The position numbers and the translations under genes are program-made. The notes beneath the pieces are model-generated. The model did no database searches and was not told the origin of the DNA. It saw only the letters and a program-made list of their open reading frames with translations. Below, one piece after another: positions 49,446 to 57,584 of a stretch of 64,000 bases of DNA. Origin of the DNA: Macrostomum lignano (Eukaryota); assembly GCA_002269645.1 (NCBI GenBank), contig NIVC01000981.1:319948-383947 (forward strand). The letters run 5' to 3'. Position 1 is the first letter of the stretch. Each line of letters begins with the position of its first letter.

Positions 49446-52142
49446 CGAGCGACCATCCTCCTCCTGGACTTTCCGGAGGGGGACCGCGCTGCGGACACCA
49501 GCACCACCGGATCTCCCTGCGCGACACCGCAGCACCAGCTGCCTGTGGTCGCCAGGGGTTAGCGAAACGGCGTTGTATCGGGATGCCCAGAACCCCTGCA
49601 GCTGAGTCAAGTAAGTCAAAAGGAAAACTTACCAAACCTAAGATATTTTGAGCAGTTACTCACAGCATTTGGTTCCAATATGACTCTGCCGCCGAACCTC
49701 GCATACAGCTCGTAGGGCAGAGCGGACAGCAGGATATATGAACCAGGAGTTCCTCGAACTAACCTGTTAGGCTGTTACCGCTCAGGTCGGAGCCTTCAGT
49801 GAGGCTCACCCGAAGTGAGTCCATGGTTGGCGGGCTCACAAAAAAGCTGAGAGCGTCGGTGACCAGCTCTCCGTCTGGCTTCATGAAGTAGGCCACAACT
49901 CTTGCCACTGGCGCCATCTCTCGCGACAGCGCGATGGAGAAGGTCTTGGCTGGAGCACCGCTTGGCATGCTGACAGTGTCGCTGAATGCGATGTTCCCTC
50001 CAGCCTCGATGAGGTAGTGAATCTCGGGCGTAAAGTGAGTAGTTCGAATGTTGAACACCATGTAGCGATCTGCGGCCGGTCTGTCAGTCGAAGTGCTCAC
50101 TCTGAGATAAGCTCCTGTGGCCGAGTAGTGACGAAAGATGAACTGCTCAGAAGTCTTTGCGGCCGAACTGCCTTCAGACTGGAGCACCGCCACCAGCCTG
50201 TAGTTGATGCAGTCTCTCGTGGTCGGCACAGTGTAGCGAACTATTGAGTCATCAGGAATGGGAATCCCCCGATCCGCATTCACCGAATTTCCAGTGTTGC
50301 AATAGAGATTCACGTTCACGTGCCGCCTGCGCAAATTCGGCTTCCTGCCGTCCGGTTGAAAAATGTGCATCTGAAATTTGAGCGGACGAGCACAGCGGTA
50401 GCAAACCAATCAATGTCACTGGTTGGACAGTGGCTAGTTAAAACTGACGCCATACCAAAGCGATGAAAGGAAATCCGGGTTTGAACTGACTCTACCGCCC
50501 AGGAACTTGATGTTCGGCGTTTCTCGGAATATCACCGTGTGAGCGGCGTGCGAGATGTTCAACAGGTAGTACCAGTCCAGTACGCTGGCGTCCACTGTCA
50601 CGTCGATGTCATCAACTAGCGCTGCCATTTTCAGCTCCTTCTTGATCTCGCTCATCGTGAACAGAAACGAAGCACGTCCTTTGAACTGTCGAGTTTATTC
50701 GTGTAAAATTGATGTGGCATTTCAATGCTACAGTAGGTGGTGTCTTAAAGAACTTTGATAGCTACATGTAGATAAGCGACAAGTACTTACATACGGTATG
50801 AATCGCCACATGGTTCCCAATGGTGAAGTCTCGGTCAGCGCGCCTCTGTTTCTAAACTGCAATCGCAGGGTTGCATTTCCTGTAGTGGGCGCATTGGTCG
50901 TGTGATTGGCCTCCAAAATGCCGTAGACACCGAAGGAGAACTCGGAGAGTTTCAGCGGCAGGCTCACGTTGACGGACAGCGGGCCACTGTTGGTGTTGTA
51001 GAAAACTGTGAAAGATTTCTCCGTAGCGAATCTTCCACTCGCCGTGACTGCAGGTTGGGGGCAGCTGGAAACTCAACTCAATATAGCCTCGGGCATTGGT
51101 TCTTGGTGAAAGCCATCGTCTCACGGCGATGCCGTTTGAGTCCACAACCTCGATGGTGTTCAATACTCGACTCTTGACCGTCAGATCAGCTTCATACGGT
51201 ATCACTCGGAACTTGATTAGATCGCCCATTGCATAAATTGGCTTTGAGAACTGAATGTATGTTGAGAATAGTTTGGGCTCGACCAGCAGTTCCGTTCTGT
51301 TTTGAAACAACAGACCAGCCTTCGACTCGACGGATCCTTCAACAAGGATGCTTACTTCCCCAATGGAGCATTCTCTGGCACCTGAAGTGCAAATACGAGT
51401 AGTTCAAGCTCAATGCATCAAAATATTGTTGGCATCGCACGTTAGTTGAATGCTTTGATAGTGATTGTGGCTATTTTCTGCATGCTGTGTTGCAACAAAA
51501 AATCTCAAATCTTTTCTTTCAGCCTGAGCAGGTCTCTTCGTCCTTCTCTACATGGCATTGCGTTCTGCACGTTCTGTTATAGCGCTTTTAGAGTGGAATA
51601 TGCTATTTGGCATTGCGTTCTGTCCGCTAAATTACAGTATCTGCCGCGGTGCAGAGAATAACTTTCTATGAACCGCACTAGTGAACGACTCTCAAATGAC
51701 TCACCGTTAGGAAAAGTGGTCGGGTTGCTGGTTTAGTGAATGTCTCCGAAGCGAAGGCCAGTTCTCGTTCCGGTTGATCAGCTTTGCCAGATTTGGCGTC
51801 CGGCTTCGCTCTTAGAGACACTCTAAATGAGAGGCTGCCGTGCAGGAGACGGAATACCGTGATGCTGATTCGCACCTTTTGCTCTGGACGAATTTTCTTT
51901 GGCGCTAACAGCAGATAGGTTCTGTAAGATTTTTGTTTATTTGGCCGGAAGGTGTCTGAATGGTACGGAAAGACAGTACGGATTGACTGACTGCATGCCG
52001 TTACTTACGGGGTTGAAGACAACTCTATGGACGTTTGTGGTAGAAAAGTTAATTGTTGCTGTTGCTGTTGCTGTCGCTGTTGTTGTTGTTGCTGTTGTCG
52101 TTGTTGTTGTTGTGTGTGTGTGTGTGCCTCGGACCGGAGCTC

Positions 52143-56562: not shown

Positions 56563-57584
56563 TGTTGTTGTTGTTGTTGTGCCAGATGCATCGCACCTGA
56601 ATCAGGGACGGTGCCCGACTCCGGGCGCTCTTCGCTGCCCCAAAAAGTGACATTGCCTCTCCGCTGCGAGAAAGACGCGGTGCCGGATATGGCCTGCTGG
56701 TTACCTGGGGGCTGCTGTTGCTGCTTCATAATCATCTGCGCACTGCTTATTGACTGCGAACAATAACTCAGCAGAATGAGCAGTGAAATGGCAACCAATT
56801 TAACTCTAAATTGGATTAACCTCGTTTTGCAGAACATCTCACCTCGGTGTGTGACGTGTGGCTCTGGTATCGGATTTGCTCTTCAAGGTGATTCCAAATT
56901 TGATTGCAAATTTTGACAGGTGGTTGTCTTAGAAAAGTAGCCTCAAAGTGAAACCTACGGCCTGATATTTTCTTTAGAAAAATTCAAATTTAAAGAAAAA
57001 CTTGACTACTTAAACTTTAGCAATTAACGAGATAAAGTCTGACTTGAGGTGGGGCAGGTCGGCTCGGCTCATTCACGGAGCGGCAGGTCAAGTGTTCAAA
57101 AATTCAACGAAACCGCTTGCTTTGAGTTGCCGCCCCCCGCGATAGCGGCTTCCATGTCTTTAAGGCCCAAACACAGACAATAAAAATTTAGGAATAAACT
57201 ATTTATTTGTTAAGCTCAAATTATGAGACGCCCCTGTACAGGCTGATGACAGCATTTATTAAACCTAATTTTCAGGTTACTAAATCGTCCTAATTATCAA
57301 CATTATAGGCAAGTTGGATACGGAGTCTCACAAAATCCATGTTACTTGGCCAGCTCAGGTGAAAGAGTGCAATACTAGTAAGGTTTTTACTGAGTCAGCA
57401 GAAAAACGCATTTTAGGCTGCTATTGAGAAACTCAACGACTTATTTTCGCAATAACAAAGTATCTTTATCGAATTTGAGTAAAATCTACTTATATTTGAA
57501 TAATTACTGCAAATATAGTGTCTAAATATACATAATAATAGGAATAAAATTTGATTTCATCTGTCCTAATGGTTTTATGTGCAA

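What the first reader, a model, noticed from the sequence alone, without database searches (positions are those of the whole stretch)
52114..56837. Intact Ingi-like LINE fused in frame to a host signal-peptide exon, with a ribozyme and a 2A peptide as two release mechanisms
Seen in sequence: the 1564-aa ORF is a chimera. Roughly the first 91 codons are exon 1 of a secreted TEP/Mcr gene (signal peptide plus polyQ). The frame then runs without a stop through the element's 5' ribozyme, a 2A motif and the PHD-PHD-APE-RT-RNase H-CCHC protein. Deleting 56562-52102 restores host exon 1 to a phase-2 GTAAGT donor that splices in frame into the MG1 exon (PTYLLLAPKKIRP). Established: L1Tc/Ingi elements carry HDV-like ribozymes and 2A peptides, and it has been proposed that these free them from upstream host transcription and translation. 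Inference: host-promoter transcripts here could give a precisely 5'-ended element RNA by self-cleavage, and uncleaved transcripts could give a cytosolic Pro-initiated 1399-aa RT protein freed from the ER signal by StopGo. The components are known; a natural in-frame host fusion showing both at once is the unusual part.
Basis: partly seen in the sequence, partly recalled or inferred. Interest (0 to 1): 0.9.

Follow-up and report, generated by a model that had tools for sequence, protein, structure and literature searches.

The report
Ribozyme-and-2A LINE inside an immune-gene exon
A young, intact jumping gene (LINE) sits inside the glutamine-repeat part of the first coding exon of a complement-like immune gene, reads in frame with that exon, and carries a self-cutting RNA and a 2A 'skip' peptide at its front; each part is a known kind, but this lineage seems to land in such repeats in a fixed reading phase.

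Summary
The 1564-aa ORF (56837..52143, minus strand) is real. It joins 91 codons of a signal-peptide/Q-rich host exon to a single-ORF LINE: 2A, two PHD-like fingers, APE, RT, RNase H, CCHC. The element (56562..~52111) has a (CA)8 tail and a perfect 12-bp target-site duplication inside a (CAA)n tract. Removing it restores an exon that splices in frame to MG1 of an Mcr-like A2M/TEP gene.

Rfam finds no ribozyme. However, the first 70 nt fold as an HDV-like double pseudoknot starting exactly at the element's first base, and relatives show compensatory changes in P1, P2 and P3.

New here: the closest relative, in Macrostomum lignano, sits the same way in the polyQ tract of a Shg1/BOD1-like gene. 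It has the same 'CA|C' junction, a TSD of up to 12 bp and an in-frame fusion. The fusion therefore looks like a lineage habit, not a one-off.

Not shown: ribozyme cleavage, 2A skipping (the upstream context is atypical), host-driven transcription, and Ingi clade membership. I rate it a new variant of a known kind, of moderate to high interest.

The parts
52143..56837 (-). Chimeric 1564-aa ORF: host exon-1 codons 1-91, then the LINE ORF
56563..56837 (-). 5' part of host exon 1. ATG at 56837-56835. Signal-peptide-like N-terminus (basic n-region, hydrophobic core aa 12-22, SSA|Q), then a Q-rich linker ending in (CAA)5CA.
   Evidence: The ORF is open for 91 codons and continues in frame across the empty site into MG1.
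56563..56574 (-). 5' copy of the 12-nt target-site duplication ACAACAACAACA
56493..56562 (-). HDV-like ribozyme, 70 nt. P1 56562-56556 with 56530-56524 (C1:G39). P2 56552-56545 with 56500-56493. P3 56543-56541 with 56533-56531. L3 UCUUCGC 56540-56534. P1.1 AG 56523-56522. P4 UCC/GGA with a 6-nt loop. J4/2 UACGAACA, with a candidate catalytic C at 56506. Predicted cleavage lies between 56563 and 56562.
   Evidence: No Rfam hit.
56526..56528 (-). First in-frame ATG inside the element (ORF codon 104). It lies in the 3' strand of P1 and is a possible start on cleaved RNA.
56340..56366 (-). 2A/StopGo motif GDVEPNPGP. The predicted skip is between Gly165 and Pro166.
55938..56339 (-). Two PHD/C1-like Cys-His fingers (aa 167-210 and 248-300)
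   Evidence: (invariant Cys/His columns)
55155..55829 (-). APE-type endonuclease domain
53556..54311 (-). Reverse transcriptase domain
52536..52922 (-). RNase H domain
52257..52304 (-). C-terminal CCHC motif CEDCGDIEDKDHWWSC
52111..52142 (-). 16-nt 3' UTR and (CA)8 tail (52126-52111)
52102..52113 (-). 3' copy of the TSD. It overlaps the last 3 nt of the tail.
52009..52101 (-). 3' part of host exon 1: the impure CAA/CAG/CGA polyQ tract plus LTFLPQTSIELSSTP, ending in a phase-2 donor CC|GTAAGT
51705..51921 (-). Host exon 2 (start of MG1, (P)TYLLLAPKKIRP...), preceded by the 87-nt intron 52008-51922
44159..51403 (-). Remaining exons of the Mcr-like A2M/TEP host gene: MG2, A2M_BRD, LDLa, A2M, TED, receptor-like domain and a C-terminal hydrophobic anchor. 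No thioester motif was found.

Best explanation
What it is (shown). This is a recent, full-length, probably still competent insertion of a single-ORF, RNase-H-bearing APE-type LINE. Its order is 2A, two PHD-like fingers, APE, RT, RNase H, CCHC. It lies in the (CAA)n glutamine-repeat tract of the first coding exon of an Mcr-like TEP gene.

How the lineage inserts (shown, on few copies). The lineage carries (CA)n or (CAA)n tails and inserts into CAR repeats, apparently nicking both strands at CA|R. The TSD is 12 bp here and 9-12 bp in the M. lignano copy. Its first base completes a CA|C His codon, and its ORF is open from that base. Any sense insertion into a polyQ-coding tract is therefore automatically in frame with the host.

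How it works (inferred). The element has no demonstrated promoter and is probably transcribed from the host promoter, or from an upstream copy when in tandem. The 70-nt HDV-like ribozyme at its 5' end then cuts just before its first base, giving unit-length template RNA. This would explain why full-length copies begin exactly at the predicted cleavage site.

Translation (inferred). The protein could be made from cleaved RNA, starting at an internal AUG (codon 104 here). It could also be made from uncleaved host-element mRNA, starting at the host AUG, with the 2A motif separating the leader from the 1399-aa enzyme. Which route matters in vivo is open. The host allele itself is disrupted.
For: Insertion. 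Intact 1564-aa ORF and domains. Perfect 12-nt TSD, (CA)8 tail and restored in-frame exon. G+C is higher in the element (0.557) than in the host exons (0.48-0.51).

Ribozyme.
- The descriptor hit lies exactly at the element's first base. The strict version gives 1 hit in the window against 0 in 8 shuffles.
- The M. lignano copy has the same P3/L3 and J4/2 (CGAACA) but different, still fully complementary, P1, P2 and P4. By direct reading of the two parses, 7 pairs change on both sides between the two.
- On a 7-sequence core alignment, 95.2% of cells pair against 60.6% in shuffles (0/500) and 40-53% for slid partners, and 12 of 15 pairs change on both sides.
- The encoded peptides differ while the pairing is kept.
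- C1:G39 matches the active L1Tc/ingi-clade ribozymes (PMC4035085).

Lineage habit.
- L001 (M. lignano NIVC01000221.1) sits in the polyQ tract of a Shg1/BOD1-like exon with junction CA|C, a TSD of up to 12 nt and a (CA)11 tail. Removing it restores a 702-codon host ORF.
- L008 and L009 are head-to-tail copies whose 5' ends abut the previous copy's CA/CAA/CAG tail, with the same '..QQH' phase.
- L003 and L004 have (CAA)n tails.
- P0192 also reads QQQQQQQH before its 2A leader.

ORF at the 5' end. The 2A frame is open from the ribozyme's first bases to the 2A in 9 of 9 elements (6 distinct ribozyme types), while the other two frames carry 1-7 stops. The first ATG is not conserved in position (codons 4 to 74).

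2A. The motif is invariant across relatives.

Literature. Co-transcription followed by ribozyme release is established for R2 and L1Tc (PMC3383444, PMC4035085, PMC3774820).
Against: - There are no activity data. No Rfam family matches.
- The covariation alignment was hand-built under the structural hypothesis from only 7 sequences.
- The loose descriptor gives about 4 chance hits per shuffled window, so the case rests on position plus covariation.
- P4 is only 3 bp here, and it is absent in L009 and in the L010 type.
- The 2A upstream context in this copy is charged and Leu-poor.
- The target rule rests on 2 host-gene insertions plus a few tandem copies. The M. lignano case was found through a gene model that exists only because it is in frame (ascertainment bias).
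- More distant relatives with upstream (CAA)n read it in the Thr frame (L025, L026, L032).
- No other copy of the family was found in the window or in the protein libraries.
Confidence: 0.8

Rival explanations
1. Evolved exon parasitism. The lineage is specialised to land in polyQ-coding CAR tracts in phase. It uses the host promoter, cap and AUG for translation, with the 2A shedding the host N-terminus (here an ER signal peptide). The ribozyme trims the RNA to unit length only afterwards or in parallel.
For: - Two independent in-frame host-exon insertions.
- A fixed CA|C junction and a TSD that is a multiple of 3 (12 nt).
- The ORF is open from the element's first bases in 9 of 9 relatives, with no conserved ATG.
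- The 2A lies just downstream of the 5' end in all relatives.
- P0192 shows the same pattern.
Against: - n=2 for real host exons, and one was found because it is in frame.
- Every element still has some in-frame ATG between the cleavage site and the 2A.
- More distant relatives are phased to Thr rather than Gln.
- Efficient co-transcriptional cleavage would remove the cap and the host AUG.
- Template copies start at the cleavage site, so translated uncleaved RNA is not what gets copied.
- The stop codon at 52143 lies upstream of host introns and should trigger nonsense-mediated decay (inference).
- The published view of LINE 2A is translational attenuation (PMC3894237).
Confidence: 0.25
2. Incidental fusion. 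This is simply an insertional null allele. The frame match follows from microsatellite targeting and has no role. All protein comes from cleaved, uncapped RNA by internal initiation, and the 2A only tunes the dose.
For: - The ribozyme-release model and cap-independent translation are the published view for R2 and L1Tc (PMC3383444).
- 2A has been proposed as a down-regulator (PMC3708506, PMC3894237).
- An internal ATG lies at codon 104.
- A tandem paralogue of the host gene lies just upstream, so losing one copy may be tolerated.
Against: This does not explain why the ORF stays open to the very first bases in every relative while the start codon drifts. It also does not explain the fixed junction phase.
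Confidence: 0.5
3. The 5' 70 nt are not a ribozyme. The conservation reflects the coding leader or a protein-binding or promoter element, and the pseudoknot fit is chance.
For: No Rfam hit. The loose descriptor has about 4 chance hits per 128 kb. The base of P1 is C-G, not the usual G.U, and P4 is tiny.
Against: - Compensatory changes keep P1, P2 and P3 paired while the peptide changes.
- The fold starts exactly at the first base after the TSD in two independent insertions.
- C1:G39 is the arrangement in experimentally active L1Tc/ingi ribozymes (PMC4035085).
Confidence: 0.07
4. Assembly chimera: the host exon and the element were joined by mis-assembly in a repeat-rich region.
For: The window is extremely rich in micro- and minisatellites, and both junctions lie in a CAA repeat.
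Against: The TSD is a perfect 12 nt, the element is complete from the ribozyme's first base to the (CA)n tail, and the empty-site reconstruction restores an in-frame exon. The same architecture is seen in another species' assembly.
Confidence: 0.03

Closest known systems
L1Tc / ingi elements of trypanosomatids (Pr77/L1TcRz plus N-terminal 2A)
   Same: Single long ORF without ORF1. HDV-like ribozyme occupying the first ~70-77 nt and cutting 5' of +1, with a C1:G39 base pair. A 2A motif near the N-terminus ahead of APE. RNase H domain. Release from co-transcripts and from tandem copies (PMC3383444, PMC4035085, PMC3708506).
   Different: The host is an animal, and the nearest relative is in a flatworm. 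Two PHD-like fingers lie between the 2A and APE. The C-terminal motif is CCHC. The tail is (CA)n, and the target is CAR repeats with a 12-bp TSD. The ribozyme lies inside the open frame and reads in phase with a host exon. Promoter activity of the 5' end was not tested, and RT phylogeny was not done.
R2 elements (28S rDNA-specific, HDV-like ribozyme)
   Same: Promoter-less logic: insertion into a repeated, transcribed target, co-transcription, and self-cleavage at or near the 5' junction (PMC3774820, PMC3383444).
   Different: R2 has a restriction-like endonuclease, no APE, no RNase H and no 2A. Its target is rDNA, not a protein-coding repeat.
2A-bearing APE LINEs of animals (Ingi-1_AC, CR1, Crack, Rex1, L2; Odon et al. 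2013)
   Same: [quoted passage not shown] The 2A correlates with loss of ORF1 (PMC3708506, PMC3894237).
   Different: Those papers describe no 5' ribozyme, no target preference and no in-frame host exons. The function they propose is dosage control.
Microsatellite-specific LINEs (e.g. Waldo, Dong; reviewed in PMC3812793, PMC4640811)
   Same: Integration into simple repeats that match or resemble the element's own tail, and head-to-tail arrays.
   Different: They belong to other clades (R1, R4) and are generally described in non-coding repeats. Here the repeat can be a coding polyQ tract and the ORF is phased with it.
Twister-variant ribozymes at the 5' ends of Schistosoma mansoni LINEs (PMC8501958)
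   Same: A 5' ribozyme in a flatworm LINE, reported to function in retrotransposition.
   Different: A different ribozyme class, and no 2A.
2A-like signal sequences of sea-urchin NLR genes (PMC4981915)
   Same: A signal sequence and a 2A on one nascent chain decide between the exocytic pathway and the cytoplasm.
   Different: There a single host-encoded peptide does both jobs. Here a host signal peptide lies about 130 residues upstream of a transposon 2A.

Membership tests
HDV-like self-cleaving ribozyme | Nested double-pseudoknot topology: P1, P2, P3, L3, P1.1 and P4 in the canonical order | tested here: met
   Parse of 56562-56493 with 7-bp P1, 8-bp P2, 3-bp GC P3, 7-nt L3, P1.1 AG:CU and 3-bp P4. 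The strict descriptor is unique in the window and gives 0 hits in 8 shuffles.
HDV-like self-cleaving ribozyme | Helices supported by covariation | tested here: met
   95.2% of cells paired against 60.6% in shuffles (0/500). 12 of 15 pairs change on both sides. Slid controls give 40-53%. Caveat: the core alignment was hand-built from 7 sequences.
HDV-like self-cleaving ribozyme | Cleavage site immediately 5' of P1, which defines the RNA 5' end | tested here: met
   By position only. P1 starts at the first base after the TSD in the window and in L001. Not tested biochemically.
HDV-like self-cleaving ribozyme | Catalytic cytosine in J4/2 | tested here: inconclusive
   A C in CGAACA (window, L001), CGAAUA (L002) or CGAAGA (L005) lies just 5' of the P2 3' strand. 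Its role cannot be shown from sequence.
HDV-like self-cleaving ribozyme | G.U wobble at the base of P1 (typical according to my own knowledge) | tested here: not met
   The window has C1:G39. The same pair occurs in active L1Tc/ingi ribozymes (PMC4035085). The L010 type has G1.U.
HDV-like self-cleaving ribozyme | Match to a curated Rfam model | tested here: not met
   No hit at gathering score or at E<=10 in 56250-56950.
HDV-like self-cleaving ribozyme | Self-cleavage activity | not testable with these tools
   Needs a co-transcriptional cleavage assay.
2A / StopGo peptide | C-terminal motif D(V/I)ExNPGP | tested here: met
   GDVEPNPGP at aa 158-166. D, E, N, P, G and P are invariant in relatives.
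2A / StopGo peptide | Suitable upstream context (hydrophobic or Leu-rich helix around -14 to -10) | tested here: inconclusive
   The window has TERLDRD before GDVEPNPGP, with one Leu and many charged residues. Relatives have LLLRAGD, ILMAGD or IVPIAMD. The requirement is described in PMC3708506 and PMC13405545.
2A / StopGo peptide | Ribosome skipping measured | not testable with these tools
   Needs a reporter assay.
Ingi clade of APE-type LINEs | Single ORF with APE, RT and RNase H, and no ORF1 | tested here: met
Ingi clade of APE-type LINEs | RT domain groups with Ingi references in a phylogeny | not tested
   No reference set of clade RT sequences was available. The nearest hits are unnamed, plus M. 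lignano at 55% identity.
Ingi clade of APE-type LINEs | 5' ribozyme hallmark and N-terminal 2A, as in L1Tc/ingi | tested here: met
   Functional analogues are present. Sequence homology to Pr77 was not tested.
Microsatellite-targeting LINE | Independent copies inserted in the same kind of repeat, with a regular TSD | tested here: inconclusive
   The window and L001 are both in CAR tracts at CA|R, with a TSD of 12 nt and up to 12 nt. L004, L008 and L009 lie directly after an upstream copy's CA/CAA tail (L004 5'-truncated). There are too few copies for statistics.
A2M/TEP family, Mcr-like (host gene) | MG domains, bait region, A2M and TED domains in order | tested here: met
   MG2 9.7e-12, A2M_BRD 7.2e-12, A2M 6.1e-7, TED 2.6e-9.
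A2M/TEP family, Mcr-like (host gene) | LDLa insertion, no thioester, C-terminal anchor | tested here: inconclusive
   LDLa E=2.6e-4, below Pfam's cut-off. No C[GAS]E[QN] thioester-type motif on the coding strand. A hydrophobic C-terminal exon lies at 44398-44159.

The most novel reading that the evidence does not exclude
This LINE lineage is a CAR-repeat (polyglutamine-tract) specialist. Its endonuclease cuts at CA|R with a 12-bp stagger, and its start-codon-free ORF is phased so that every sense insertion into a polyQ-coding exon becomes an in-frame extension of a host protein. It would then borrow the host's promoter, cap and AUG. The 2A discards whatever host N-terminus it inherits, even an ER signal peptide, and the HDV-like ribozyme restores a precise unit-length template. 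Coding microsatellites would in that case be a retrotransposon niche comparable to rDNA for R2.
Probability: 0.22. Interest if true: 0.85.

Novelty: new variant of a known kind. Interest (0 to 1): 0.62.

Why it matters
It extends the combination of an HDV-like ribozyme and a 2A from trypanosome L1Tc/ingi elements to an animal LINE lineage. It also shows the ribozyme lying inside an open reading frame.

More interesting is the link between three things normally treated separately: microsatellite target choice, ribozyme processing and 2A recoding. The ORF is open from the element's first bases, the start codon is not conserved, the junction phase is fixed, and two independent in-frame insertions sit in polyQ exons of unrelated genes. 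Together these make a long-standing question directly testable, namely what the N-terminal 2A of single-ORF LINEs is for. Reporter, RACE and census experiments would settle it.

It also matters for annotation. At least one public gene model (M. lignano BOX15_Mlig033504g5) is such a host-LINE chimera.

Tried and rejected
- Rfam at gathering score and at E<=10 gave nothing relevant. The only hits were chance snoRNA and mascRNA matches on the other strand.
- Repeat search and blastn/tblastn of the element against the rest of the window found no second copy.
- A word-indexed protein search with the N-terminal alignment and a full HMMER search of 1.84 billion representatives gave only distant relatives. 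No hit exceeded about 35-45% identity over more than a short stretch, so no further members of this subfamily were obtained.
- A search for orthologues of the host TEP N-terminus gave no hits.
- An exact look-up of the window ORF found it is not on record, so the source organism stays unidentified. It is probably a flatworm, given the 55% M. lignano hit.
- I looked for cryptic donors in the 5' half of exon 1 that could splice around the element in frame. The GT sites at 56704 and 56596 are both phase 1 and incompatible with the phase-2 acceptor (direct reading).
- I considered that the 'signal peptide' might be the C-terminal anchor of the upstream TEP paralogue. I rejected this because that gene's last exon and stop lie at 58194-57979.
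- I tried to fit HDV-like folds to L008, L011 and the L025 type, without a convincing result. They were left out of the covariation set.
- Ruminski et al. 2011 (PMC3308841) is not held.
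Full report
**1. The observation**

The minus strand carries one ORF of 1564 aa from ATG 56837 to stop 52143. Pfam places an APE-type endonuclease at aa 337-561, reverse transcriptase at 843-1094 and RNase H at 1306-1434. 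It also gives two weak PHD/C1-like fingers at aa 163-195 and 263-299. A CCHC motif lies at aa 1512-1527. The element's G+C (0.557) is higher than that of the host exons (0.48-0.51) and of the intergenic stretch upstream of the ATG (0.406).

**2. Boundaries**

Upstream of the element the sequence ends ...GGCA(CAA)5CA. The element begins CTCGTCC at 56562. After the stop codon come a 16-nt UTR, (CA)8 (52126-52111) and then CAA/CAG/CGA repeats. The longest flank identity is a perfect 12-nt duplication, ACAACAACAACA, at 56574-56563 and 52113-52102.

Joining 56563 to 52101 gives a 368-nt exon in phase 2. It ends CC|GTAAGT. An 87-nt intron and a TTACAG acceptor then lead to (P)TYLLLAPKKIRP... with no stop. 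Because both flanks are CAA repeats read as Gln, this result does not depend on where inside the repeat the boundary is drawn.

**3. The host gene**

Exons further along the same strand hit MG2, A2M_BRD, LDLa (weak), A2M and TED. No thioester motif is present, and the last exon is hydrophobic. This is an Mcr-like TEP architecture.

The N-terminus encoded at 56837 has a basic n-region, a hydrophobic core (aa 12-22, Kyte-Doolittle up to 2.95) and SSA|Q. No signal-peptide predictor was available, so I call it signal-peptide-like.

A second Mcr-like paralogue lies just upstream on the same strand and ends at about 57979. The ATG at 56837 therefore sits 1.1 kb into an intergenic spacer. It is the first coding exon of the downstream gene, not the tail of the upstream one.

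**4. The ribozyme**

Rfam finds nothing. By hand and with my own descriptor, the first 70 nt (56562-56493) fit the HDV-like double pseudoknot:

- P1 CUCGUCC/GGAUGAG
- P2 ACUCUGGG/CCCGGAGU
- P3 GCC/GGC
- L3 UCUUCGC
- P1.1 AG
- a short P4
- J4/2 UACGAACA

A loose descriptor is not significant on its own: it gives 8 hits in the window against about 4 per shuffle. A strict version (P2 of at least 7 bp, at most 95 nt, GC-only P3) finds only this site and none in 8 shuffles.

The decisive evidence is comparative. The best protein relative (55% identity, M. lignano) has at its 5' end the same P3/L3 and J4/2 (CGAACA). Its P1 is CCCACUC/GAGUGGG, its P2 is UUGUCCAGU/ACUGGACGA, and its P4 is longer and different. 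Metagenome relatives L002, L005, L009 and the L010 group fit the same scheme with yet other helices.

On a 7-sequence core alignment, 95.2% of cells pair against 60.6% in shuffles (0/500) and 40-53% for slid partners. Twelve of 15 pairs change on both sides. The alignment was hand-cut under the hypothesis, which inflates the figures somewhat. The encoded peptides differ while the pairing is kept, so selection acts on the RNA.

In both independent insertions, P1 begins at the first base after the TSD. This is expected if the templates are self-cleaved RNAs. The C1:G39 pair is the arrangement reported for active L1Tc/ingi-clade ribozymes (PMC4035085).

**5. A second in-frame host fusion and a target rule**

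The M. lignano protein is annotated with an N-terminal COMPASS-Shg1 domain. Its locus shows a 4447-bp element inserted in a CAA/CAG tract of exon 2. The junction is ...CAGCA|CCCACUC, the tail is (CA)11 and the TSD is 9-12 nt. Removing it restores a 702-codon host ORF.

So in two species and two unrelated genes the same things hold:

- the element follows 'CA' of a Gln codon;
- its first C completes a His codon;
- the TSD is, or may be, 12 nt;
- the ORF runs on in frame.

L008 and L009 are head-to-tail copies. There the previous copy's stop, UTR and CA/CAA/CAG tail directly precede the next 5' end, again in the '..QQH' phase. L003 and L004 end in (CAA)n, and L004's 5'-truncated copy directly follows an upstream copy's (CAA)n tail. 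P0192 reads QQQQQQQH before its leader. More distant relatives with upstream (CAA)n are phased to Thr, so the Gln phase is a feature of this sublineage and not of the whole clade.

**6. The ORF at the 5' end**

In 9 of 9 elements with a parsed ribozyme (6 distinct types), the 2A frame is open from the ribozyme's first bases to the 2A, a span of 64-85 codons. The other two frames carry 1-7 stops. The first in-frame ATG wanders from codon 4 to codon 74. In the window it is codon 104 of the chimeric ORF and lies inside the 3' strand of P1.

This pattern fits initiation at or upstream of the 5' end. It does not prove it.

**7. Mechanism**

*Shown:* the anatomy, the TSD, the restored exon, the ribozyme topology with covariation, the 2A motif, and the recurrent junction.

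*Inferred:* co-transcription from the host promoter, self-cleavage at 56563|56562, and translation either from the cleaved RNA or from the host AUG with 2A release.

*Cautions:*

- The 2A context here (TERLDRD-GDVEPNPGP) is unlike the Leu-rich contexts of relatives, and unlike what high-throughput data link to skipping (PMC13405545; also PMC3708506).
- With an ER signal peptide upstream, the fate of the downstream protein depends on skipping efficiency (compare PMC4981915).
- The element's stop codon lies ahead of the host introns, so the chimeric mRNA should be sensitive to nonsense-mediated decay (my inference).
- The host allele is disrupted. I found no in-frame way to splice around the insert.

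**8. Comparison with what is known**

Ribozyme plus 2A in one element is known for L1Tc/ingi (PMC3383444, PMC4035085, PMC3708506). N-terminal 2A followed by PHD is known in animal LINEs (PMC3708506). Microsatellite-specific LINEs and tandem arrays are known (PMC3812793). A flatworm LINE with a 5' ribozyme of another class is known (PMC8501958).

The papers I read explain LINE 2A as a translational attenuator. None of them mentions ribozymes together with in-frame host exons.

What looks new is the combination in an animal lineage:

- a ribozyme inside the open frame;
- targeting of CAR repeats;
- a fixed phase that makes polyQ-exon insertions in-frame fusions.

Clade membership (Ingi) remains untested.

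**9. Verdict**

The finding is real and well described. Its functional reading is plausible but unproven. It is better seen as one instance of a lineage-wide habit than as a singular accident. I rate it a new variant of a known kind, with interest 0.62.

Noticed in passing
window 57979-64000 (minus strand): A second Mcr-like A2M/TEP paralogue lies head-to-tail upstream of the disrupted gene. It has an LDLa-like exon near 63998-63861, A2M at 62745-62323, a 533-aa TED exon at 61549-59948, a receptor-like exon at 59837-59610 and a last exon with a hydrophobic anchor at 58194-57979. It is 55-71% identical to the downstream gene in matched exons.
   Followed up: partly
L001 6001-11372 (M. lignano NIVC01000221.1): The public gene model BOX15_Mlig033504g5 / P0001 is a chimera of a Shg1/BOD1-like host gene and a full-length LINE inserted in its polyQ tract. 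The true host ORF continues for several hundred more codons after the element.
   Followed up: yes
L002, L008-L014, L016-L018, L020-L026, L030, L032, L034, L036 (about 90-110 nt upstream of the 2A): Many 2A-bearing relatives share a conserved G(T/G)GTTTTTGG... motif about 30 codons before NPGP. It translates as VFL/GFLxxGG, often followed by NPAFD. It could be a peptide or an RNA signal. The window element and its M. lignano relative lack it.
   Followed up: no
L004 (GCA_038533115.1, labelled Pseudomonadota MAG) and L003 (GCA_003704735.1): Animal-type LINEs (APE, RT, RNase H, with (CAA)n tails) sit on contigs of assemblies labelled as bacterial or metagenomic. This is probably eukaryotic contamination. 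In L004 a 5'-truncated copy directly follows the 3' end of another copy.
   Followed up: partly
L009 359-408; L010 2043-2100, L016, L017: Some relatives have minimal HDV-like folds with no P4 at all (50-58 nt). The L010 group has the canonical G1.U start, and a compensatory P2 change is seen between L010 and L017.
   Followed up: partly
window, whole length (e.g. 31689-34227, 58522-59559, 21279-23746, 42022-43799, 38020-39019): The density of tandem repeats is extraordinary, with 34 TRF rows at score >=200. Examples are (ATCT)x638, (CTA)x346, a 23-mer x107 and a 29-mer x61. Several lie inside introns of the TEP gene (46931-47472, 45621-45940, 44384-44772).
   Followed up: no
window 3338-4618 (+), 13027-13743 (-), 35285-36598 (+): Neighbouring single-exon-like ORFs encode a Cys-loop ligand-gated ion channel, a TALE/KN homeodomain protein and a rhodopsin-family GPCR.
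   Followed up: partly
window 56650-56630 (host exon 1): The host exon contains GTCACTTTTTGGGGCAGCG (..VTFWGS..), which resembles the GTTTTTGG / VFLxxGG motif of distant 2A-LINE leaders. This is probably coincidence, but it was not tested.
   Followed up: no
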